Positions 15,437 to 57,593 of a stretch of DNA of 64,000 nt are shown here, one piece after another; positions within the stretch are counted from its first letter, which is position 1; every line of letters begins with the position of its first letter. The notes below the pieces were generated by a model. It was not told the origin of the DNA. It did not search any database and worked only from the letters and a program-made list of their open reading frames with translations. Origin of the DNA: Guillardia theta CCMP2712. Its lineage: Eukaryota; Protista; Cryptophyta. The position numbers were made by a program, and so were the translations under genes. Where the stretch lies: NCBI RefSeq assembly GCF_000315625.1, contig NW_005434638.1:251300-315299 (forward strand), read 5' to 3'.

Positions 15437-15536
15437 NNNNNNNNNNNNNNNNNNNNNNNNNNNNNNNNNNNNNNNNNNNNNNNNNNNNNNNNNNNNNNNN
15501 NNNNNNNNNNNNNNNNNNNNNNNNNNNNNNNNNNNN
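15437..15536. other. Scaffold gap (100 N) flanked by GGA/GAG low-complexity DNA
   Basis: Seen directly. Confidence 0.99.
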
Positions 15537-18730: not shown

Positions 18731-20179
18731 ATGATGTCCAGTCCCACCAACGGGACCTACTCCTTCGCCTCCGAACCCCGGCCTGTGTCCAACAGGAAGC
18801 TCGCTCCCGACGTGGCAGGCGATGCAGAGGACAGAGTCGCGATCAACATCATGTGGGACAAGAGGGTCGTGCGTGGGAACACCTTGTCCTCTCCTCCAGT
18901 GCCTGCACGTCCCGTGGAGAAACAGCGGTCGTCGAGCCCGCACGCGTCCCCTCCCAACCTGCTGGGAACTACCCGGGGGTCGAGGAGGAGGAGGTCGAGA
19001 GGGATGAGCCAGACGCAGATCAGTGTGCCTGTGGTGGAGTGTCTGCTGGAAGAGATCACGGACAGACCTGTGGAGATTGTGTTCGAGGCAGGAGGGAAGA
19101 AGCTGGAGGACAGGCCGCCGTCTCCTCTCTTCATCCCCCAGCAGATCGGCGTCGACAAAGAGACGCAGGTGGAGCCTGGGGATCTGTTTGACTTCGATGC
19201 GGAGGTGCAGCCTCTGCTGGAGATGATCGTGGGGAAGACGCTGGAGCAGAGCCTGGCGGAAGTGATGGAGGAGGACGAGCTGCGTGCCAAGGCGGAGCGG
19301 CGAGATGACTGGGAGATCGTTCAGATGTCAGAGAGGTTCGAGTGTGAGCGAGTCGAGCACGAGCATACCAGGAGGGAGCAAGAGAAGGCTCGGAGAGCCG
19401 TGCAGAACAATCAGAGGGAGCAGGAGGAGGCAGCGCGAGACGTCAAGGTCGTCACTCAGAGCTTCTCGCACAACTGGGTTGGAGATGTGTTCTCAACGGT
19501 GTTTGAAGAGCTTAAGGATAGCGGTGAGTGGTCGGTGTGGAGGAGGAGAAGGATGGGAGGAAAGAGGCAGAGGAGGACGAATAGACGAGCTCGTGACTGT
19601 TTCGCAGGATTCTTTTATGACCCCCTCGTGCGTGAAATTGAGGAGGAATTCCTGCCCTGGCTTGCTGAAGGGGTGAGGAGGGGGAGGGGGAGGGGGAGGG
19701 GGAGGGGGAGGGGAGGGGGAGAAAGGAGGATGAAAGAGGAGGAGGAGGAGGGATGGGTCTGGGGGAAGTGGATTCAAGAGTATTGGGTATCTAGAACTGA
19801 TGAGGATCACAGGTTTCAGCGAGCATACAGCACTATCATGATGCAGAGAAGCTCGTGGAGGAAGAGATCAAGAAAACAGTGAAGCTGCACGAGCAGAGGT
19901 GAGGAGGAGGGGAGGATGGAAGAGGAGGAGGTAGTGGGAGCGGTGGGGTATGGAGGGGGATGGGGGGTTGAGAGGGAGGAGGACATGACACGGGGTTGCA
20001 GACAATCGGATGCCCGGCAAGCGTATGAGAGGCAGGTTGAGGAGGAGAAGAGAGCAAGAGAGGAGGAGGCAGCGGAGGCAGCAGCTGAAGCGGAGGCAGC
20101 AGCCAAGGAATTGGAAGAGAGTGAAGGGAAAGAGCAGGGAGCGCCGCAGGAAGAGAACAGCGAGGCACCTGAAACATAA
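18731..20179 (+). CDS. RSP3: Flagellar radial spoke protein 3
   Basis: NIMWDKRVVRGNT, LEEITDRPVE, RPPSPLFIP...DKETQVEPGDLFDFDAEVQPLLEMIVGKTLEQSLAEVMEEDEL, GFFYDPLVREIEEEFLPWL. Introns after about 19524. Confidence 0.92.
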
Positions 20180-45023: not shown

Positions 45024-45750
45024 CTAGAGCTCCTTTTTGTCGTCTGCTGTTTCCTTGACCTCGAACTCTGTCGGCGCACAGATCTTCGCAATCTCAGAGC
45101 AGACAGTCTTCTTGTTGGATTCGAGCAATCCCGAGGTCCGGGCATCGAAGAAAAACTTTACAATGTCATGCTCGTGCTCCGCAATCAGACTCTGGGTAAA
45201 ATTGTCACTTTGAAGAGAGCTTCTGGATAAAGACGGTTACCTGGCACATGGCCAACAGCTGATTCTTGTATTCTTTGTTGCCGACTGACGTTTCCATGCG
45301 CGTGTACTCGGCTTTCCCGCTCACCGACGTCACGTTGTACTTGTCGAAGAGATGATCCATTGTGCATACACGATCTACAGCTTCCTGCACGGAGAGTTCG
45401 CTCTCGACGTATGGCACTTTCGTCTTCTTCTTTCTCTGGTTCAAGATCAGTTCAACCCTCCCAACCTTGGAGGCCGATCCTACTCACCTTCTCGATAAGG
45501 ATGGTCTCTCCGGCACGTGTTTGCCATTCGTGTTCAACCTCTCGTCTCATTTCTTCCGCGACTGCTTTACATGCCGAGCACTTAAGAGCCTTGTAGGTAG
45601 TCTTAACTTTCTGTGAATCTGATTAGCAAACCTGTGCATCGTGCATTGAACAAATGCCTTCTTCTTTCCTTCAACCGAAGGAAACAGTGCAAGGAGCACG
45701 CATAAGCATACAACCAAGAGATGTGTCTTCCTGCAGTGCATATTAGACAT
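45024..45750 (-). CDS. Canopy/MSAP (DUF3456) saposin-like ER protein
   Basis: Signal peptide; LKCSACKAVAEE; VPYVESELSVQEAVDRVC; LLAMCQ; C-terminal VCSEIAKIC...DDKKEL* (KDEL-like). The first intron is GC-AG. Confidence 0.85.
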
Positions 45751-46681
45751 TTTAGTGGTACGACAAGTCAAACAATAGCAACACACCTCATCATCACTGC
45801 ACAAGTCTCAGTATCGTTGTCAGGACGTGTTTTGGCCGACTAATCAGAACGAATCCATGCGGAGGTTGCTTGATATCAGCAGTTGCAATACTCGAGACTC
45901 CGATTCGTCCTAGGCATGACCAAGGTCATGACGAATTACGATTTTTGATGCAAGGAATGGGATCTTTGTTCAGGGTTCGTGGCAAGGGCGCGCAGTACGG
46001 ACGGGATACAGGGTGCTGATCCCTTGGAAGTATGCAAAGGATTCCGTTCTCAACACACTACATTTCTGCAACCAGCTTACTTTCTACACTTCTGCCACCA
46101 GCCTACTTTCTTATCGAACGTTCTACGGACTCCTTGCCGCTCCTCTTTGTCATAATTCCAATACGCAACAAGGTGGTTAATATCATACTGTCTCAGTTGT
46201 AATCCACACGCATGCTCTGTCTTTCCCTCGTTCCCAATTTTCTGACAGAGAGCAGAGAAAAGAGACAAACACATTTTTTTCCGATCGACTTCTTTCCTCT
46301 TCCCTGCTCCTTTTCTCCATCTCCAAGCACTACCGGCTCCTCCTTCCCAAGCATTTCCTCCATGCCGTCATCGTCCTGGTGCCACGCGTCGGGTAGGATG
46401 ACTCAAGTCTGTCGTGGGGTCCTTCCGGATACAAATTTCAACATGTACCTTTTAATTATGAAAATGAAAAAGATGCCCTGACGTAATGTTTCAAAAATAA
46501 GTAGACCCTGACGAATATCTGGTAAAATATTTCCCAGACAAAAGAACGTTCTGGCGATCTCGAACCCGGCTTCACTGCGAGTCCTCGGACCGACTTGCCA
46601 GCGGCCCGGGCCGGCCCGGCCGGGCCCGGGCGGCCGGGCCCCACACGGTGACCCGCCGGGACCGTACGGATCGGACTACGG

Positions 46682-48742
46682 CGTCACCATCGTCTCATAT
46701 GTGATGCATATATGATCGGATGCAGTCCGCCAAAGTAAGATGAAGTTTTATTACCGTCACAACTTGCCGTCGCTGAGTCGGATTAGGATCAGCGACGAGA
46801 CTTGGACGGTCTCCAAACTGAAATAAGACGGAAAGTATGGAGAGCGACGCGAGTCAGGGAGAAAAAGTTGAGAGCAGCGAGGCCCCCCCCAAGCTGAACT
46901 ACCGTATGTTCCAGAAATCCACATGCTTGAATTCGCCAACTTGACGCGACAAGTAAGTGGTATTGGGGAACTTTCCAGACATGCAAGGTTCTTCACTCAA
47001 CTGATGTTTTTCTGGCATCCATGGAGCGCAACCTGAACAAATATTGGGCCACAGCGACATCAAGTTTGGGGTTGTAAAGCACAAGGCGTTGTGAAAAATT
47101 TCATCTACATGAATTTCATTTACATACAGATGGATGTTTGCTTCTTCAGCTACCTGCCATGGCGATTTATCAACGACTGGGGAACAGAAAAAAAATTCGA
47201 TGGCTGGGATACTATTGAATCAACGTCTTGAAGGAATAACGAGATACGATCTTTGCATGCACTATACACGTTCACTTTTGTGGTATCGGCACCGCAAACG
47301 AAAGATGTGTCATAATCTCATAAGAGTTTGTATGATGTCCATGAGCATGTACGCGTCTTACCGGGAGACCCTTGGAAATATCTGCCAATATATCCCTGTC
47401 TATAAGTACCGAACGTGATAAATATCCGCATCAACGGTACCGACGTGAATCCACCTTCCCCGGTTGTCGTACCGCTGCCACAGAAGTTCGACCATTGCTG
47501 GGTACCGTACATATCTATGGCATCCTGGCCGTCGCTCATCTCGATTCAGGCTCACCCCGACCTCTTGTCTGCTTGTTGGTTCATACCAGGGGTTCATACC
47601 CCTACTGCTACTACCCGCGCTGTTCCACACTATTCGATCTATATTCGATTTTCAAGCTGTTCATTGCCTGCAATGTCAAGGTCATGCAACTTTGTCTATG
47701 GAGTGTGAATGTTTTTGGACAAACATTAGAAGGATTTTCTGGGTCTTCTTCCTCAGAACTCTCTTCAGTAATTTCAGAACCGGATACCCCTGATTGTCTG
47801 AATTGAGATGGATGGGCCCTTTCCGGCTGAGGGTTCTTTCCTCTTCCTTTCTTCGAGGCTCGACAAGCAGTCTCAGAGATAGAAGTCTCTAGCGCTGGCT
47901 TTGGAAGTCATCGACAGGATCCGTGTCAGTCAAAGATATATCAAAGGACGTATCTTTCTGTTACGTTTGAAGGCTTCGTGGTTGCAATTGATACTCATTT
48001 GGAAGTACAGTAGCACTGCGCATGTGAAAGGTAAGAATCATGAGCTGGGAGATGGGGGCTTGCGAGGCGTTGCTTTTTGCAAGTCGAAAAAAGAGAATAC
48101 GTAATGTACAAAACATTGAGCGCGCTGCAACGATGACATGCAAATGATTGATATCGTGATATAGGTCTCACGAATCCTTCATAGGCTATGGTAGTTGCAC
48201 GATTGTCATCATTGCACAGGCTGAATTTAATTGGTCGCCGCCTTGCCATTGCGATTTATCCGAGTTTGACAAGCCTGGAGTGGGGTCTCGCCGTGTGCCG
48301 AATCAAAGGGTGGGTAGTGGACGGGGTAGTCACTGAGTGAACTAGGGTGGGGTAGTGGACTGGTCCCGCGGGTGTGTGGTGTTTCCGAGGGTGGGGTAGT
48401 GCACTAGAGACCACCCTAACCTTTACTATCCCACCCTCGCCTTCACCGGACGGCGGATCTCTATTCTGAAGCCGAGGGTGGGGTAGCGCACTAGTCCGAA
48501 ACAGCCGAGGGTGGGGTAGTGGACTAGTTCCTAGCTCAACTCATCCACTTGAAGCGTCTCAGACAGCAGACGCGAGCGCGTCGTAGGTCAAGATGTGCCA
48601 GATCTCCATCACAGTCCTGATCCCCATGAGCGTTGTCAGCATGGCTCTTGGCTTGGCTCTCCTGATTGCTGGGATCGTGGCGGGAGCTCTCAAGGTGCCT
48701 GACAACTGCAAGCAAATCGAATCTACGTACAACACTGGATAC
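46682..48742 (+). repeat. Left arm of large inverted duplication
   Basis: Reverse complement of 51382-53114. The inner part 48090-48742 is near-identical; the outer part has indels. Confidence 0.95.
48300..48530 (+). promoter_or_regulatory. Array of (CCGA)GGGTGGGGTAGTGGACTAG-like motifs upstream of four-TM gene A (mirrored at about 51595-51820)
   Basis: About five direct copies plus one inverted partial copy within 300 bp of the ATG. Confidence 0.55.
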
Positions 48743-49923
48743 AAGCATGGAATGAAAACGGGATACAACACAGGATTCGCTGAGGAATTCTCTTCAGAGT
48801 TCAACTCAGGATACAACTACGGATACAACTCAGGATACAACACAGGGTTTAAAAAGGAGAGGTATTACCTAACAGCAGGTAGCTATGGTTCATCTAGCAC
48901 CCAATCGTCGACATCTTGGTATTCAAGTAAAGGTAGATACAACTCAGGATACACGGGAATCAACTCGCCTTGGTACAACTCGGGGTATAGACATGGACAC
49001 GACGATGGATACAATTCTGGTTCACATGTGGGACATGAATCTGGATATAACATGGGATACAACATGGGTTACAACTCAGGTTATCGCACTGGTAATAGTT
49101 CCATCAACCAGGAATTAAACTACATGCAAGGCTTTTACGCAGGGGCGTACGACAGCAAGAATGCTTTGTCAGGAAATAATCCAACATACAAGGCAGAATA
49201 CGATGCTGAATACAACTCCTCGTATCAAATTGGAGACAAACAAGCAATCACAGCAATCAAAATGGTTAGGGACTATGACTTCACTGACTGTTTTCATTAC
49301 AGAAATGTGGCCATTGATGGTACCATCACTCTAACATTGCTGGGATGCGTTCCTGGGTTTACATGCCTTGTCTCTGGAGCATTCGGCTTCATGGCCGGCA
49401 AATACAAGAACAAGATCGTGGGAGATGTGTCTTTTACGCTTCTCATCCTCTTCCTACTCAGCTCTGTTGCGACAGTACCGCTTCTTTTCATCTTAGCTTA
49501 CTTTCATGCTTACAGCTACTGCGGTATACGTTTTCTCGTGTCTTGCTTCTTTGCTTCTATGTTGGCATCATCTGACTTGATCTTACACATACAGACGCAT
49601 ATCCAGGGAGTTACTGTGAAGGTACTTCCTTCTGCAAGACATACAGCAGAACGCTCTGGATCATCGTGTCGCTGAATATCGTCCTGTTTTTGTTCGAGCT
49701 TGGCATTTCGATCATCTGGTGCTGCATTTGCTGCTACCCTGATCAGGACAGAAGCAGCTCGACGGCAGTCACAGCAGCACGAGAGGAATTGCCCATGGCC
49801 AACGTGGCATCGGACGTGGTCCATCAACAACCAGCAAACGCACACCAGGGGAGACCGCGAGCAGCAGGCGCGGCTAATAGCAAGACCGGAGCAGCACCGC
49901 AAGGAGCGGCAGCACGCAAGTAG
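48593..49923 (+). CDS. Four-TM MS4A/CD20-like protein A with GYNxGY-repeat loop (2 exons)
   Basis: TM1, Cys, GYNSGY repeats, Cys, TM2 (LVSGAFGFMAG), TM3, intron after YC, TM4 (LWIIVSLNIVLFLFELGISIIWCCICC), polar tail. Confidence 0.8.
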
Positions 49924-50266
49924 TGTACTAAGTGTTGTGAAAAGTAAAGCATTGAAAGGATGCGAAGCGAAGAGCATAGAGAGGGAAGCGGGGAGGGAAG
50001 GGCAGAGTAAAGGGATGGCTGGAAGAGATGTAATAGAAATATCCTACGGGGAAAACCAAACGTGAAATGCATACAGCAGAATTGCGTGTCAAGCGCTGGG
50101 CAGCGGCCGTGGAAATTTTTAAAACTTCGGATAGAAATCGATGAAAGAATACACGGATGTCTTACTCCGTGGCTTTGCTTGTGCAAATGTGCTTTAAGAG
50201 GATCTGATAGTCAAACCAGCAAATTTTCTTTATGTTTCTGTGTTACGTTCTTCCTCTTCTGAAACA

Positions 50267-51531
50267 CTACATCCGTAGTACGTGCCCTTCAGCTGCTCGT
50301 TGCAGTCGTGCTGCTTCGGTCTTGCCATGGGTCGGCCCCGCTACTCGCGTTCTCTCCTGGTGTGCGTTTGCTGGTTGTTGATGAACCACGTCCGATGTCA
50401 TGCTGGCGATAGGCAGCAGGTCAACTGCAGTATTGTCTTGACCCCACTCGTTAGGCCGACAGCACAGAACGCATGTGATGATTGAAAGCGCAAATTCATA
50501 GAAGAACAGACAACCATTCAGTATCTCGATCGTCCAGAACACCCGGATGAAGGCATCACAGAAAGTGCTACCGTTGAAGGCTGTATATCCTGTGAAACAA
50601 GGCTGGTCAGAAGCAGATGAGTTCGGAGACTGTGGTTAGGAGAGCGCATGGAAATCTCACCGCAGAAGTAAAGACCAGCCAAGGATATGAAAGGGAGTAG
50701 TAGCAATGCTAGCAACGAGCAGATGAGGGCGACAATAAGAAGTGCGAGATAAAACCCTCCCACTATCTTGCTTCTGTAGATGCCAGCTGCGATTCCTAAA
50801 GCTCCTGAAACTATGTAGAAGAAAGCAGGGACACATCCAAGGAGAGATGCACTCAAAACAGAACCCCTAGCGGAAGATGATGCAGCATTGCAGTCGCTGA
50901 AGGGATAGTAGTCTTCTTGTCTAGCTGTGAGTGGTGAATATTCTACACTTTGGTATCTTGCTTTGTACTCCAAGCTGTATTCTGATTTGTATGCAGTACT
51001 ACGGTACGACCCCGAGGAGTACCCCGTGTTAAAATTGACTCCGTTTTGAAACGAGTCGTGCCCTTGATTGTATCCCGTATTGTATCCCGTGTTGTATCCC
51101 GCATTGAATCCTGAGTAGCCTGCATTATATCCCGAGTTGTAGCCTGACTGGTATGCTCTGTAGTAATTCGATGAAGAGTATCCCGTGTATTCTGAAGGGT
51201 ACGTGTTTGCATAAGAAGCCGATGGGGCTAAATTATAGTAAGTCCCTGCATCAAACCCTGCGTTATATCCGTAGTATCCGTAGTTGTATCCTGAGTTGTA
51301 TCCGTAGTTGTATCCTGAGTTGAAACCAAGATTGAAACCAACATTGTACCCATTATCATATCCCGAGTTGTAGACATCATAGTATCCAGTGTTGTACGTA
51401 GATTCGATTTGCTTGCAGTCGTCAGGCACCTTGAGAGCTCCCGCCACGATCCCAGCAATCAGGAGAGCCAAGCCAAGAGCCATGCTGACAACGCTCATGG
51501 GGATCAGGACTGTGATGGAGATCTGGCACAT
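50267..51531 (-). CDS. Four-TM MS4A/CD20-like protein B with GYNxGY-repeat loop (2 exons)
   Basis: Same first 50 aa as gene A except one D/N change, same intron position, TM2 IVSGALGIAAG, TM4 FWTIEILNGCLFFYEFALSIITCVLCC. Confidence 0.8.
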
Positions 51532-53114
51532 CTTGACCTACGACGCGCTCGCGTCTGCTGTCTGAGACGCTTCAAGTGGATGAGTTGAGCTAGGAACTAG
51601 TCCACTACCCCACCCTCAGCTGTTTCGGACTAGTGCGCTACCCCACCCTCGGCTTCAGAATAGAGATCCGCCGTCCGGTGAAGGCGAGGGTGGGATAGTA
51701 AAGGTTAGGGTGGTCTCTAGTGCACTACCCCACCCTCGGAAACACCACACACCCGCGGGACCAGTCCACTACCCCACCCTAGTTCACTCAGTGACTACCC
51801 CGTCCACTACCCACCCTTTGATTCGGCACACGGCGAGACCCCACTCCAGGCTTGTCAAACTCGGATAAATCGCAATGGCAAGGCGGCGACCAATTAAATT
51901 CAGCCTGTGCAATGATGACAATCGTGCAACTACCATAGCCTATGAAGGATTCGTGAGACCTATATCACGATATCAATCATTTGCATGTCATCGTTGCAGC
52001 GCGCTCAATGTTTTGTACATTACGTATTCTCTTTAATCAGGGGCATATTACTGGTAAACCTCCATCACATTCTTCTGATTCATCATACAATCGTTGAATG
52101 TTGAGGACCTTCTTGTTCAGATGGCCGATCAAGGACCATAACACTAATGGTGTAGAGAGTTCGTGAATTGAAGACATAGCCCCCATCTCCCAGCTCATGA
52201 TTCTTACCTTTCACATATACTGGCAGATATTTCAAAGGGTCTCCCGGTAAGACGCGTACATGCTCATGGACATCATACAAACTCTTACGAGATTATGACA
52301 CATCTTCCGTTTGCGGTGCCAATACCACAAAAGTGAACGTGTATAGTGCATGCAAAGATCGTATCTCGTTATTCCTTCAAGACGGTTGATTCCATATCCG
52401 AGCCGCCATCGAATTTTTTTTCTGTTCCCCAGTCGTTGATAAATCGCCATGGCAGGTAGCTGAAGAAGCAAACATCCATCTGTATGTAAATGAAATTCAC
52501 GTAGATGAAATTTTTCACAACGCCTTGTGCTTTACAACCCCAAACTTGATGTCGCTGTGGCCCAATATTTGTTCAGGTTGCGCTCCATGGATGCCAGGAA
52601 AACATCAGTTGAGTGAAGAACCTTGCATGTCTGGAATGCTCAGGGAAGGCCCTGGGGTTATCATCGTACATAGGATATCTTCACTTCATCTTCATCCTGT
52701 GCTTGCTTCCGAATATCCCGGAGTCCTGCCGCGGTTCCCCGGCAATGCCATTTACTTGTCGCGTTGGCGAATTCAAGCATGTGGATTTCTGGAGCATACA
52801 GCTTGGGGGGGGGCGGGGAGGGGGTGATGCTCGGGGGGCGAATCATCTCCTCCTTCTCTCGCATCCTTCCTATCGCGTGCTTGCGAGCAATGTCGAATCG
52901 CTGCCGCCCTCAACTTCAGTTTTCTCCCTCGCGTCGCTCTCCACACTTTCCGTCTTATTCAGAGCATGTCCAAGTCTCGTCGCTGATCCTAATCACCCAA
53001 AGCCGGACCGTCCCCGGACGACTCAGTGACTTGTGACGGTAATCAAGTTTCATCTTACTTTGGCGGACTGCATCCGATCATATACAGTGCATCACATATG
53101 AGACGATGGTGACG
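51382..53114 (-). repeat. Right arm of large inverted duplication
   Basis: Reverse complement of 46682-48742. Confidence 0.95.
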
Positions 53115-53716
53115 GTCAATCCATTTTTGGCCGAAACAGTTCTGCACAAGCATGTTCTGAAAACATTTCAGACTTGTGGTACAAGGCTGGAAGCACTGAA
53201 TCAGGCACCGCACCTTGCCCAGGCTGGGCCAACTTGGCAAGTCACGTTGAGAGCCCGGCGCGACTCCACTGATGAAACTTAACTTTGAGTAAAGATGAGA
53301 CCGTGAAATTACCGTGCCTGAACTTCGGAACTTCTCAACGTCTCCAAGAACTTATGTGAGTTCTTACAGTACGGTCTTAGGAGATGTCAGTGTGTTACAC
53401 GGCGTCGGGCCGTGGGCCCTGCGGCCGCCGCGCCGGGGTTGCCGGGCCCGGGCCGAGACGAGGCAGGCTCAGGCAACTGAGAGTCACCGGCCGGGCAGGG
53501 GGGTAGGGGTAGGAGGGTTGGATGGCTCAACAAGCGAAGGGGCAGTGGGTCAGGTATCACTGATTACCGGGAGAACCAATTCAATTTCAATACTTTCATC
53601 TTGATTTAAGTTGATTTTGTATATTTGAAATTTTAGTATGACACGAAAACTATAACTATCAAATATGTTGGAAAGAGCCTTGCGCCGGAAATTCGATAAG
53701 GTGTGGAGTGAATGCC

Positions 53717-56700
53717 ATGCGCATAGCGGCGTTGCTCTGCCTCCTCGCGCTGGCAGGAGCGAAGGAAGGTGAGTGATAGGTCATGATTGAACTCGCGTGA
53801 GATGCTCTCCCATCATCCCTCTTGCTCTCTCACATGCATCACAACGCGCTCTACAATGCCAGCTTGTCATCATCAGTCTGACTGTACTCACGCAGGTTTT
53901 CAATCATGGGGTGGAACTTTTCGGTTTAGCAAGATAGCATGGAGGAGAGTGGTAGACAATACAGTCACATTCAATCTAGAGGTTGCTTTCACAAGAAAGG
54001 TGGACACTGGTTACTTTAAAGGCTCCTCGCTGGACGGCTATGCGAGGGTTGGAGACAGCATTACCATCACGGGTCAAGCAACGCCTGAGTTCAACTTCGG
54101 CGATGAGACTCTTCGGCGGGATCTTGTCATCAAGGTCACTGCGATCTCGGAGCAGGAGGACTGGGTCATGGGCGAGCTTGACATAACACATACATACGCT
54201 ACTCCAAACGACAACGGGAACCCCTGGTATGCCAGTTTCACAGGTTGCTGCAGATATTTCCGGCTATCAAACAACGCCGATGCACCGTGGGAGTTGATCA
54301 CCACTGTCGACTTGACTGTAGCCAAGGAATCTCCACGTGTGAACATGCTCCCAGTTGTTACGTTGGCCTCTCAGTCTGTCGATCCTACCAAGACGCAGCC
54401 TTACTTTCAAATACCTGCGATCTCCCCAGATGGCAGCGACCTCTCCCTCAAGATCATCGATGGCAATGATAACGGCAATGCGATCAAGTTCGATCAGAGT
54501 GCCGTCGTGTCCCTACCCCTCAACCCTTTCCTGACTCAAGATGCCATGGACTGTTGCGATGGGAAGGCCTCCAGTTGCCCTGTAAGTTCTCTCAGCGCAA
54601 ACGTGTTTGCATTCACTGTCATATTCAGAAATACATCAAGAACAACTTTGGCGCATCCCCAGGCTGTCTGGGAAGATTGTTAAGAACCGACAACGTGTTA
54701 CCAGCCTTGACTGTGAGTTCGAAGCCACCTGTTGTGTCAATGTTCTTACGACAACGGTGTCAGGTTGAAGGATGGTTTTACTTCACCAGCGTCGGAGGGG
54801 GGGTCCTGTTCACAGCAAACGACACGAGCTGTCGGCAGAATTGCGAGGGATCTCTATTGTGAGCTACCTGATGTTTGCGACATACTTCCCTTACAGTTGT
54901 GTTGATGTCAATTTCGGCTTACGAATTTGTGCTAGAACTATCGCGGTGGACCCTTACTCCGTTATTGTTGGACACAATGTTTGGGATGCAACAAAGAATG
55001 CTCTGCAGTTCCAAAACGTGACCTTTCGGTTCGCTAGCAACCCCAATGTCGGGACGGTTTGTGATGTTGTTGTACAATCCATTTGTCTTACACAGGAAAT
55101 TGCAGAATAGCATGCAGAATATGTTCGTGCATATTGCAGTTGTGCGCAAAACCATTGTAAATTGCTCTTCGGAAAACTGTGGAGACTGGTACTCTACGTA
55201 CAAGGTTTACATCAACGGGTAAGACCTCAATTCCGAAAAGAAAACCAGCTGAAAGCTTTGCACAGACATCTTCTTGGCATCCGCGATTATCCGCGTTGCA
55301 TATCGGGACAATCTTGCTCGATTGGGTTGCGAAATCGCAACTGCCAAACAACTCCGGCAACATGCTCAGCCGAGTTAACGATTGGAGAGTCGAACCCAGT
55401 GAGTTGCTAGACTCATCTCGTGCCAGGACTGAGTCATTGCTAGATTGTTGGACCACGACGTGCGAGCGCCTTGACTGGCCCAGGAGCTTCGTGCAAGACT
55501 CTCTCAGGCTCATCCATGTATTGTGCAGACAGCATGGGAAGAAATTCTAGCATCATCTTCGGCAGTGCAAGCACAATAGGGGCGTATGGACCCTTCGAAG
55601 GGTAATGGACGTTTGCGCTGAACACGACCTTACGATTCTCGCAGGTATCTGGACGAGTGGCGCATATGGAATGGTGAACGTTCTCAATCCGACATCAAAG
55701 CTTGGTATCAGATCAAGCTAGACCCAAGGACTTCGGACTTCAATGGGGATCCAACGGTCATTCTGGACATGTCGATGCAACCTATGCAAATCAACAAGAA
55801 CAATTTCGACAAGATGTCGTTGTTGTTGGCTTCCTACAGCTTTGACGCCAGGCTCGCTACCTCCTCTACGGGAGTCACATGTCGCATTCCTGGTTGTAGG
55901 TTCTTGAGCTTCAAATCCACATTCCCCGACATCGGCAAGATGGATCAGAGCTGGATTGCAGCGTGGACAGCTCCAGTGAGCCCTCAGACAGGAAACGTCG
56001 TGATGGCTGATATTGACAACACGGGCTACGTGAAGCAAGGGTCGGTCGCGGTATTGGATCCGCAAGGAGGATGCATGTGTGGATGTCCCTTCTTCGTGGG
56101 GAGCCGGTGCGCCATTGGCTCCAGCTACAGCATCCTCCCTGGACTATACCAGGTCTCGATCCAGGTCTCCAGCTCACTAGTCAATGGTCCTAGCACTCCT
56201 GTCGACTTCATGCTGAATGTTCTTGCTTCCACCTACGACTCGGGGCACATGCGGCTGCTCAACAAGGATACATTCTGGGTAAACCAGTACATCCCGGACA
56301 GCGACATTGTGGGAAGCTTCAGGACACTTCAGTTAGGAGGAGTAGTCGAGATGGTCAGCCCCTCGCTCGTTGACGCTCGCTCGTTGCAGTCCTTCTTGTA
56401 CCCGCAGATTGTGCAGACTTATGCGAACTTCGAAATCAAATTAACCTTTGTTGGATCTGATGTGCAAAAAGACATCAACGGAAACATCGACACGAAGAAC
56501 ACGCGGGTGAGTCTTCTACTCGTTGTCTTCGCTGCTGCTTGTGTCTCACAGGTTGTCTCAGGTCTCCTTCACGCTCTCTCACGCACCTCCCGAAGCTCAA
56601 TTCTCTGTCGTGACGGGAATGAACCCCGCACATATGGTAATGACGTGGACCCCTTGCGAGAGCGAGTATGGACTGAACATCTTCTGCTTCAACGCTGTCG

Positions 56701-57593
56701 ATCAACACATGATCGGGACGGTCTGCAGCGGTGGAGCCCACGAGTATTGCAACAGCGACCTCACCGCCAACTGCACCTCGGGAACTTGCAGCACGTACAA
56801 CCAGTATGACACGTCAGCATCGTCCAGAATGAAGTGCGCGCGAGTCAACGTGGTTCAAGATCCGGCACCCTACTTTGTGAGCATGGTCCCGTCATACAAG
56901 GAGTTCATCGCCGGCAAGGAAGACGGCCTCATCGTCTCAGGACAAGATGACAACTGCTTGGACTCTGTGAGGATAGAGATCGAACCCTCCACCCCTCTCC
57001 CACCCGGTGCCATGTTCGGCCCCCAAGAGAGAGTCTCGCTAGGAGTGGGCAAGGACTGTAACGGAGTGCAGCGAGTGTTCAAGTGGAAGCCGGACGTGAA
57101 GACAGGAGGCTACAACCGAACGACCTGCTTCCGCATCGTAGACACTGGGGGCGACTCTTTGTGCAGGCCGCAGGCACCTCAGAGCGCTGTCACCTGCATC
57201 CTCATTCATGTTTTGCGGTGCAAATACGCCCTCCAGCAGAACCAGCGGCTCCTCGACATCGCGAGCTCCTTCGGCATCAGCTGGATGCAGCTGTGGAGTG
57301 CTAACTTGGACCTCCACCATCCCGACTACATCCTCTACCGATCGCAGGTGCTGCAGCTGGGGCACCTCTACCACGTCAAGGGGACGGAGACCAAGGATGG
57401 GCTGGTGGCGCGATTCGGCATGAACCTGCAGCTGCTCCATGAGCTCAACTACGATCTCATGTCGTCCAGCAGCCTCAGCGCTGGCTCCCTGGTTTGCGTC
57501 ATTCCCAACTCCTGCACCGGGATGGCGTCGACTGTGTACCAGGGAAGCACACAGAATGGGAACTCCCTCTCCTTCCCATCTTCGTGGGTCTGA
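53717..57593 (+). CDS. Large secreted Cys-rich protein with two C-terminal LysM domains (possible LamG-like middle), multi-exon
   Basis: Signal peptide MRIAALLCLLALAGAKE; FTGCCR motif; KYALQQNQRLLDIASSFGISWMQLWSAN...QVLQL and LYHVKGTETKDGLVARFGMNLQLLHELN...GSLVCVIP (LysM pattern). Confidence 0.8.

What the first reader, a model, noticed from the sequence alone, without database searches (positions are those of the whole stretch)
46682..53114. Palindromic constant/variable locus: two convergent four-TM genes with a shared 653-bp head and divergent repeat ectodomains
Seen: 48090-48742 and 51382-52034 are equal-length inverted repeats with only two mismatches found by eye, covering the promoter, 5' UTR, TM1 and the first Cys. 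Identity stops abruptly at the first STYNTGY repeat, and the enclosed 2.6 kb (loop, TM2-4) is strongly diverged though clearly paralogous. The outer arms (46682 to about 47400 versus about 52215-53114) are older, with indels. Inference: ongoing arm-to-arm conversion or inversion keeps a constant head on variable bodies, like a shufflon or antigenic-variation cassette. A crossover in the arms would flip the interior and swap which variant sits behind which distal upstream region. A tyrosine recombinase relic lies about 7 kb away, but no link is shown.
Basis: partly seen in the sequence, partly recalled or inferred. Interest (0 to 1): 0.8.

Follow-up and report, generated by a model that had tools for sequence, protein, structure and literature searches.

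The report
Partial gene conversion between inverted membrane-protein paralogs
Two old, tail-to-tail copies of a cryptophyte-only four-helix membrane protein gene in Guillardia theta have had their promoter and first 50 codons made almost identical by gene conversion; this is an ordinary recombination outcome, not a demonstrated switch for varying the cell surface.

Summary
In the Guillardia theta CCMP2712 nuclear genome, 48090-48742 and 52034-51382 are a 653-nt inverted repeat with exactly 2 mismatches. Identity collapses at the first Gly-Tyr-Asn repeat. The repeat covers 503 nt upstream plus codons 1-50 of two convergent genes, GUITHDRAFT_108865 and GUITHDRAFT_139144. Each has one 71-nt intron at the same site.

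The gene bodies are old:
- Synonymous divergence is saturated (dS about 1.8-2.2).
- The introns and 3' flanks are no more alike than shuffled sequence.

The head has dS = 0. Its upstream DNA is not conserved in the one available orthologue, a metagenome contig. So the head was homogenised by interlocus gene conversion. Older tracts (96%, 84%, 80-87%) show that this happened repeatedly.

Independent read sets confirm all four arm junctions and exactly two head copies, so this is neither an assembly artefact nor a cassette archive.

Nothing supports a shufflon-like or antigenic-variation mechanism:
- Both genes carry their own complete, identical promoter.
- Pfam found no recombinase domain in the six ORFs tested at 37-40 kb.
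- Neither gene has detectable RNA in the data examined.
- The orientation isomers could not be tested, because no long reads were available.

The proteins belong to a small cryptophyte-restricted family with an MS4A/CD20-like fold.

The parts
48593..49923 (+). Gene A (GUITHDRAFT_108865, 419 aa). CDS 48593-49523 and 49595-49923, with a 71-nt GT-AG intron at 49524-49594.
   Evidence: The spliced translation equals P0001. The gene call in L001 is at the same place.
50267..51531 (-). Gene B (GUITHDRAFT_139144, 397 aa). CDS 51531-50661 and 50589-50267, with a 71-nt intron at 50660-50590 in the same codon and phase as in gene A.
   Evidence: The spliced translation equals P0002.
48090..48742 (+). 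Left head: the most recent conversion tract, 503 nt upstream plus codons 1-50 of gene A.
   Evidence: 653 nt with 2 mismatches to the right head. dS = 0. Depth is twice single-copy in collapsed contigs.
51382..52034 (-). Right head: the mirror copy, upstream region plus codons 1-50 of gene B.
48022..48060 (+). 39-nt block identical to 52216-52178. It is separated from the head by 29 nt specific to A (48061-48089).
52035..52177 (-). 143 nt present only in the right arm. It includes a 31-mer (52108-52138) that is also found in a high-copy, highly transcribed sequence elsewhere.
47394..48021 (+). About 628 nt present only in the left arm. No terminal inverted repeats were seen.
46973..47393 (+). 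Left outer arm, intermediate-age tract: 96.2% identical to 52636-52215. It is intergenic.
   Evidence: It differs in age from the head (Fisher p = 0.0007).
52215..52636 (-). Right outer arm, intermediate-age tract.
46682..46965 (+). Oldest recognisable part of the left arm: 80-87% identical to 53114-52743, with indels.
52743..53114 (-). Oldest recognisable part of the right arm.
48800..48841 (+). 42-nt identical patch inside the repeat loop (matching 51324-51283), lying after 57 diverged nt.
49790..49897 (+). C-terminal tail patch: 84% identical to 50415-50308, ungapped. An older conversion tract.
   Evidence: Tail dS is 0.49 between A and B but 1.6-1.9 to the orthologue.
50308..50415 (-). Tail patch of gene B.
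49924..50266 (.). 343-nt spacer between the two stop codons. The two halves are unrelated (52% identity, 53% for shuffles).
48345..48538 (+). Promoter-proximal motifs inside the head. GGGTGGGGTAG occurs four times (48345, 48389, 48476, 48509) and GTTCCTAGCTCA once (48527). They are mirrored at 51586-51779.
   Evidence: One GGGTGGGGT and an exact GTTCCTAGCTCA also lie about 100-145 nt upstream of the ATG in L002.

Best explanation
Two ancient paralogues of a cryptophyte-specific four-helix (MS4A/CD20-like) membrane protein lie tail-to-tail. Non-reciprocal homologous recombination between the inverted copies (interlocus gene conversion) has repeatedly overwritten the 5' flank and the first 50 codons of one copy with the other. 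The most recent tract covers 48022-48742. Earlier tracts cover 46973-47393, the far outer arms and the C-terminal tail. The repeat loop, TM2-TM4, the intron and the 3' flank have stayed diverged. Shown here: the mosaic of divergence, the two-copy state and the reality of all junctions. Inferred: tracts end at the loop either because homology is exhausted there or because conversions that erase the difference between the two bodies are selected against. The conserved TM1 coding sequence would serve as the homology anchor. The consequence is that both genes share the same proximal promoter, 5' UTR and signal-anchor helix, so they are probably regulated alike, while displaying different Gly/Tyr/Asn/Ser-rich outer loops.
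For: Head: 2 mismatches in 653 nt, 503 of them non-coding. Head dS between A and B is 0, against 0.40 from either gene to the orthologue C in L002. Body: dS is 1.8 (TM2-4) and 2.2 (loop). Intron identity is 59% against 55% for shuffles, and 3' flank identity is 52% against 53%. The upstream region is not conserved in L002, where similarity starts 3 nt before the ATG, so selection on a conserved promoter cannot explain the 99.7% identity. The TM2-4 tree gives (A,(B,C)) with 91/89 support, while in the head A and B are nearly identical and equally far from C. The identity classes differ significantly: head against the 96% block p = 0.0007, and the 96% block against the tail p = 2e-6. Raw DNA reads give depth of about 9.8 on the arms against about 10.3 elsewhere when both arms are offered. 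373 reads fit two places, close to the roughly 344 expected for two copies. Collapsed arm contigs sit at 170 against 90.
Against: The AU test does not reject an A+B clade for the body (p = 0.119). The claim that the duplication predates the split from the L002 organism is therefore favoured but not proven, and gene A sits on a long branch. Head dS is also lower than body dS between the orthologues B and C (0.40 against 1.0) and in the second pair (0.23 against 0.96). Part of the head's conservation is therefore a general constraint. The donor and direction of conversion are unknown. The reason tracts stop at the loop is inferred.
Confidence: 0.82

Rival explanations
1. In addition to conversion, crossovers between the 653-nt inverted heads flip the 2.6-kb interior now and then. 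Cultures would then hold both orientation isomers. This would be an unprogrammed by-product of homologous recombination with little functional effect.
For: The geometry allows it: inverted arms of 653 nt at 99.7% identity, 2.6 kb apart. Recurrent conversion shows that the arms do pair. The two isomers have identical short-read k-mer content, so no available data contradict it.
Against: No read or contig spans an arm, so there is no positive evidence. The same 2501-nt interior contig and the same junctions appear in the 2011 and 2021 runs, but both isomers would give that result.
Confidence: 0.25
2. A programmed inversion or cassette switch, like a shufflon or an antigenic-variation system, places alternative ectodomain bodies behind one constant expressed head.
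For: There is a constant head, variable bodies and an inverted geometry. The products are predicted surface-exposed membrane proteins. Another scan note reports a similar arrangement for other surface-protein paralogues in this genome (unchecked).
Against: There are only two head copies in the genome, and no further close variants in about 5.8 and 1.8 billion proteins searched. Each copy has its own full promoter, ATG and TM1, so there is no silent-versus-expressed asymmetry. The bodies are old and under purifying selection, and B has an orthologue. The arms are long homology blocks rather than short recombinase sites. Six ORFs at 37-40 kb gave no recombinase domain in Pfam. Neither gene is transcribed in the RNA data examined.
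Confidence: 0.03
3. The head identity reflects strong purifying selection on the promoter and TM1 rather than any recombination.
For: TM1 is the most conserved part of the family, and head dS is lower than body dS even between orthologues.
Against: 503 non-coding nt carry a single mismatch, yet this region shares nothing alignable with the orthologue's upstream region apart from two short motifs. There are zero synonymous differences in 50 codons, against dS of 0.40 to the orthologue.
Confidence: 0.01
4. The arm identity is an assembly artefact, for example a collapsed or wrongly duplicated repeat.
For: The window comes from a draft assembly that has a gap at 15437-15536.
Against: All four arm boundaries and the interior are reproduced by contigs of two other runs. 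Raw-read depth fits two copies. At 48506 all 8 raw DNA reads laid on the left arm carry its own letter, and no differing letter was listed at the mirror place, so both variants are present.
Confidence: 0.02

Closest known systems
Interlocus gene conversion between inverted paralogues. From my own knowledge: arm-to-arm conversion in human Y-chromosome palindromes, and segmental conversion between the tail-to-tail RHD/RHCE membrane-protein genes.
   Same: The copies are inverted and close together. Non-reciprocal tracts with sharp ends produce mosaic genes. The events recur, leaving tracts of different ages.
   Different: Here the tracts cover the promoter and N-terminus and spare a very old, saturated body. 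Y palindromes homogenise whole arms. The organism is a cryptophyte alga, for which the two literature searches run here found no description of this locus or family.
Shufflon of plasmid R64 and other site-specific DNA inversion switches (from my own knowledge).
   Same: A constant N-terminal part with alternative C-terminal parts in inverted orientation.
   Different: Those systems use short (about 19-31 bp) recombination sites and a dedicated recombinase. They have one promoter and several promoterless segments. Here there are 653-nt homology arms, two complete genes and no linked recombinase.
MS4A / CD20-like four-helix membrane proteins (Pfam PF04103), and more broadly tetraspanin and sarcospan.
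   Same: The fold is a four-helix transmembrane bundle. The best structural match is the Fc-epsilon-RI beta chain (MS4A2), with Z 16.5, rmsd 2.8 A and 154 residues aligned. Uroplakin, sarcospan and PRPH2 score about 15. Weak CD20-family hits occur in 8 of 18 family members, best E 1.2e-7.
   Different: Gene A itself scores 15.4 bits against a cut-off of 27.9. The long loop here is the first outer loop (about 175-195 residues, 53-61% Gly+Tyr+Asn+Ser), whereas in CD20 the second loop is the larger one (my own knowledge). The family was found only in cryptophytes.
First extracellular loop of occludin (MARVEL family), which is rich in Tyr and Gly (my own knowledge).
   Same: A four-helix membrane protein whose first outer loop is dominated by Gly and Tyr. 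A source names one G. theta paralogue 'MARVEL domain-containing'.
   Different: The Pfam MARVEL family was not among the 25 best-supported families. MARVEL structures score lower than MS4A: synaptophysin Z 13.4 and synaptogyrin Z 11.5. The likeness in loop composition is an analogy, not evidence of homology.

Membership tests
Interlocus gene conversion between paralogues | Divergence is sharply discordant between adjacent segments of the same pair, including at neutral sites. | tested here: met
   The head has 2 mismatches in 653 nt and dS = 0. The body has dS of 1.8-2.2. Introns and 3' flanks are at shuffle level.
Interlocus gene conversion between paralogues | Phylogenetic incongruence: the converted segment groups the paralogues within a species, while the unconverted segment groups orthologues. 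| tested here: inconclusive
   In the head, A and B are nearly identical and equally far from C (dS 0.40). The body tree is (A,(B,C)) with 91/89 support, but the AU test does not reject A+B (p = 0.119).
Interlocus gene conversion between paralogues | The identity cannot be explained by selection on a conserved element. | tested here: met
   The orthologue's upstream region is not alignable. Similarity starts 3 nt before the ATG.
Site-specific DNA inversion switch (shufflon, Hin/Gin, fim type) | A dedicated recombinase is encoded beside the invertible segment. | tested here: not met
   Called neighbours carry DUF3456 or SIBA-E_N; others have no Pfam family. The six ORFs at 37-40 kb gave no integrase or recombinase domain at E of 0.01-0.1 or better. 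Pfam may miss Crypton-type enzymes.
Site-specific DNA inversion switch (shufflon, Hin/Gin, fim type) | One fixed promoter or N-terminus with alternative promoterless segments, so that inversion changes what is expressed. | tested here: not met
   Both genes have the full identical 503-nt upstream region, ATG and TM1.
Site-specific DNA inversion switch (shufflon, Hin/Gin, fim type) | Both orientations are present in a population. | not testable with these tools
   Reads of 38-60 nt and contigs that break at the arms cannot link the flanks across 653 nt. No long-read run was listed.
Antigenic-variation cassette system | An archive of several silent variant cassettes sharing the constant part. 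| tested here: not met
   Head copy number is 2 by raw-read depth and contig depth. Only A and B carry this head among the proteins found.
Antigenic-variation cassette system | Mutually exclusive expression of the variants. | tested here: inconclusive
   Depth on both gene bodies is zero in about 20 million RNA reads. Thirteen probable RNA contig sets hold none of the interior's words. Neither gene is seen, so exclusivity cannot be judged.
MS4A / CD20-like (PF04103) | A Pfam match above the curated cut-off. | tested here: not met
   Gene A scores 15.4 bits against a cut-off of 27.9. Within the family, 8 of 18 members match at E of 1 or better, best 1.2e-7.
MS4A / CD20-like (PF04103) | A four-helix transmembrane bundle that superposes on solved MS4A structures. 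| tested here: met
   The TM helices have pLDDT above 90. Chain 8k7t_B gives Z 16.5, rmsd 2.8 A, with 154 of 160 residues aligned. It is the top of 48161 chains, though helical bundles score high in general.
MARVEL (occludin, synaptophysin) | A sequence or structure match better than to other four-helix families. | tested here: not met
   MARVEL is not among the 25 listed Pfam families. Synaptophysin scores Z 13.4 and synaptogyrin Z 11.5, both below MS4A and tetraspanins.

The most novel reading that the evidence does not exclude
Homogenisation limited to the head could be a maintained feature of surface-protein gene pairs in Guillardia theta. Inverted paralogues would keep an identical promoter and signal-anchor module, so that alternative ectodomains are co-regulated. 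They might also be exchangeable between two chromosomal contexts by homologous inversion, in a life stage or condition not sampled by existing transcriptomes.
Probability: 0.07. Interest if true: 0.6.

Novelty: new member of a known kind. Interest (0 to 1): 0.3.

Why it matters
This is a clean, well-bounded example of partial concerted evolution in a cryptophyte nuclear genome. A regulatory and N-terminal module is kept identical on two paralogues that are otherwise saturated. It also documents a small cryptophyte-restricted family of MS4A-like membrane proteins with long Gly/Tyr/Asn-rich outer loops, whose function is unknown. For annotation and assembly, the 653-nt arms mean that the orientation of the 2.6-kb interior rests on the original paired-end assembly alone. 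The result does not open a long-standing question. The attractive surface-variation reading is unsupported.

Tried and rejected
1. Two scans of metagenome contigs for further orthologous pairs found nothing. I could therefore not test whether other species also homogenise the head.
2. The exhaustive profile search gave only 24 family members and no A-type orthologue outside G. theta. The long 'hits' P0006, P0008 and P0021 are unrelated proteins that share only GYN-type repeats.
3. Testing for orientation isomers with reads is impossible with the runs on offer. Reads are 38-60 nt, and contigs break at the arms.
4. I considered head-limited conversion in the second (tandem) pair, 119098/146992. 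Head dS is 0.23 against 0.96 in the body. I did not accept this as conversion, because the orthologue comparison shows a similar ratio (0.40 against 1.0) and the upstream regions are not shared.
5. I found no gross sign of positive selection on the loop. dN/dS is about 0.27 in both loop and TM region, although dS is saturated.
6. I looked for transposon features at the 628-nt and 143-nt arm-specific segments and saw no terminal inverted repeats.
7. Rfam gave no match in 46500-53300.
8. Pfam on six ORFs of the reported recombinase region gave no recombinase domain.
9. Two literature searches found nothing on this locus or on a cryptophyte MS4A-like family.
Full report
**Identity of the DNA.** The window is nuclear DNA of the cryptophyte alga Guillardia theta CCMP2712, scaffold JH993000.1. 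Locus L001 equals window 38593-59923. The window has few long ORFs, short GT-AG introns and a radial-spoke-protein-3 gene, all consistent with a flagellate eukaryote.

**The observation.**
- The repeat finder and blastn show an inverted repeat, 48090-48841 against 52034-51283.
- Base by base, the first 653 nt (48090-48742) carry exactly two mismatches, at 48506 and 48704.
- In the next 57 nt, 30 positions differ. A 42-nt identical patch follows (48800-48841), and after that the alignment needs gaps.
- Outward there is a 39-nt identical block (48022-48060 / 52216-52178).
- Beyond it lie a 96.2% block (46973-47393 / 52636-52215), then 87% and 80% blocks with indels reaching 46682 / 53114.
- The left arm has about 628 extra nt (47394-48021). 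The right arm has 143 extra nt (52035-52177). Neither shows terminal inverted repeats.
- Near the centre, 49790-49897 and 50415-50308 are 84% identical without gaps.

**The genes.**
- Gene A (+) is 48593-49523 plus 49595-49923.
- Gene B (-) is 51531-50661 plus 50589-50267.
- Each has one 71-nt GT-AG intron in the same codon and phase.
- The spliced products equal the deposited proteins GUITHDRAFT_108865 (419 aa) and GUITHDRAFT_139144 (397 aa).
- The head therefore holds 503 nt of upstream DNA and codons 1-50, which encode TM1 and Cys39. In those 50 residues the proteins are 49/50 identical. Over the rest they are about 40% identical.
- The outer arms are intergenic. They lie between a DUF3456 gene (45024-46363, -) and gene A, and between gene B and an 1111-aa SIBA-E_N gene (53717-57593, +).

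**Is the structure real?** I laid four runs on 46950-52700.
- Contigs of a 2011 run and a 2021 run both contain one 2501-nt piece (48812-51312) with no differences. This confirms the tail-to-tail interior.
- The same runs contain short pieces across each of the four arm boundaries (48022-48119, 48713-48829, 51295-51411, 52005-52102).
- The arm itself collapses into one contig at about twice single-copy depth (170 against 90 in one run, 10.8 against 6.4 in the other).
- Raw 38-nt DNA reads of a third run give about 9.8-fold depth on the arms against about 10.3 elsewhere when both arms are offered. 373 reads fit two places, close to the roughly 344 expected for two copies.
- At 48506 all 8 raw DNA reads laid on the left arm carry its own letter, and no differing letter was listed at the mirror place.
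- So the head exists in exactly two copies in the genome. The structure is not an assembly artefact, and no further head copies are hidden elsewhere.

**Age of the parts.** One close relative exists: a 2418-nt metagenome contig (L002) carrying a gene I call C, with an intron of 68 nt at the same site.

| Segment | dS A-B | dS to C |
|---|---|---|
| Head (aa 1-50) | 0 | 0.40 (A-C and B-C) |
| TM2-TM4 | 1.8 | 1.0 (B-C); saturated (A-C) |
| Loop | 2.2 | 1.5 (B-C) |
| Tail | 0.49 | 1.6-1.9 |

- The two introns are 59% identical against a mean of 55% for shuffles. The 3' flanks are 52% identical against 53%. Neutral sites inside the interior are therefore saturated.
- L002 shares no alignable sequence with A or B upstream of position -3. 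The 99.7% identity of 503 non-coding nt cannot be conservation of an old promoter.
- A maximum-likelihood tree of TM2-TM4 with eight other family members gives (A,(B,C)), with 91/89 support for B+C and 95/97 for the trio.
- The AU test does not reject A+B (p = 0.119), and A sits on a long branch. That the duplication predates the split from the L002 organism is therefore favoured but not proven.
- The identity classes differ significantly: head plus 39-mer against the 96% block, p = 0.0007; the 96% block against the tail, p = 2e-6.

The picture is a mosaic made by several conversion events of different ages, laid over an old pair of paralogues.

**Selection.** dN/dS is about 0.27 in both loop and TM region, for A-B and for B-C. 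There is no gross signal of diversifying selection, though dS is saturated. The loops contain 12-nt periodic repeats, including a perfect 24-nt doublet in B at 51274-51322. Slippage probably contributes to loop change.

**Expression.**
- In about 20 million sampled reads of a 2026 RNA-seq run, depth is zero over both gene bodies.
- The only pile is on a 31-mer (52108-52138) with loose ends on both sides. It belongs to another, abundant transcript.
- Thirteen probable RNA contig sets of this species hold none of the interior's words.
- Both ORFs and their splice sites are intact, and B has been under purifying selection since its split from C. I therefore read the genes as conditionally expressed rather than dead. 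This is an inference.

**The switch hypothesis.** Five points argue against a shufflon or cassette system.
1. The head exists in two copies only, and searches of about 5.8 and 1.8 billion proteins found no further variant behind it.
2. Each gene is complete, with its own identical proximal promoter, so a flip would alter only distal context.
3. The arms are long homology blocks rather than short recombination sites.
4. Pfam can miss Crypton-type enzymes.
5. The bodies are old, not rapidly diversifying.

An occasional unprogrammed inversion by crossover within the arms is plausible. It cannot be tested here, because both isomers have identical short-read content.

**The protein family.**
- A profile of TM2-TM4 found only 24 proteins among 1.84 billion representatives.
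- The named members are G. theta paralogues (108865, 139144, 119098, 146992, 111499, 147092, 146648, 162029), a Rhodomonas salina protein and marine protist transcripts.
- The first outer loop ranges from about 10 to about 240 residues across the family. In A and B it is 53% and 61% Gly+Tyr+Asn+Ser.
- Pfam gives weak CD20-like hits in 8 of 18 members (best 1.2e-7) and Tetraspanin hits in 7 of 18. Gene A itself is below the cut-off.
- An AlphaFold model built with the family alignment has four TM helices at pLDDT above 90 and a disordered loop.
- Its best structural match among 48161 chains is the Fc-epsilon-RI beta chain (MS4A2): Z 16.5, rmsd 2.8 A, 154 residues aligned. Uroplakin, sarcospan and PRPH2 follow at about 15, synaptophysin at 13.4 and CD20 at 11.7.
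- I call the fold MS4A/tetraspanin-like. Membership of PF04103 is not established for A and B.
- The Gly/Tyr-rich first loop recalls occludin, by analogy only.

**A second pair.** Genes 119098 and 146992 are direct tandem neighbours on JH993103.1. They share a 93% identical 121-nt head that starts 3 nt before the ATG, but no upstream DNA. Head dS is 0.23 against 0.96 in the body. The orthologue comparison B-C shows a similar ratio, so I do not claim conversion there. Local duplication is nonetheless how the family grows.

**Verdict.** The shufflon or antigenic-variation part is not. This is a new example of a known process in an understudied lineage. That would be worth comparing.

Noticed in passing
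window 52108-52138: This 31-mer, inside the right-arm-only 143 nt, is covered by hundreds of RNA reads whose ends on both sides do not fit the window. In one DNA run a contig of about 9 times single-copy depth joins 48181 to 52108 on opposite strands. It probably belongs to a high-copy, highly transcribed element elsewhere. It remains unexplained.
   Followed up: partly
window 48345-48538 and L002 606-660: GGGTGGGGTAG occurs four times in each head and nowhere else in the window in that form. An exact GTTCCTAGCTCA follows it. One GGGTGGGGT and the same 12-mer lie upstream of the orthologue in L002. These are candidate conserved promoter elements.
   Followed up: partly
L003 10001-11001 and 12636-14286 (JH993103.1): A second pair of family members (GUITHDRAFT_119098 and 146992) lies in direct tandem. 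The heads are 93% identical over 121 nt and the loops differ greatly in length (about 50 against about 130 residues).
   Followed up: yes
window 51274-51322: A perfect 24-nt tandem doublet (period 12, Gly-Tyr-Asn units) lies inside the loop of gene B. It suggests recent in-frame repeat slippage.
   Followed up: no
window 53717-57593: The neighbouring 1111-aa gene carries an SIBA-E_N (integrin-beta-like) N-terminal domain, and an ORF within it matches LysM. It is another probable surface protein beside the pair.
   Followed up: no
window 15437-15536: A run of 100 N marks an assembly gap.
   Followed up: no
window 18731-19882: This ORF gives a strong match to radial spoke protein 3, a flagellar axoneme protein (E 1.7e-52).
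   Followed up: no
This does not exclude a Crypton-type enzyme.
   Followed up: partly
proteins P0006, P0008, P0021: These unrelated proteins of about 510 aa carry long GY(N/D)xGY repeat tracts and match Pfam Yae1_N. They resemble the cryptophyte loops in composition only.
   Followed up: no
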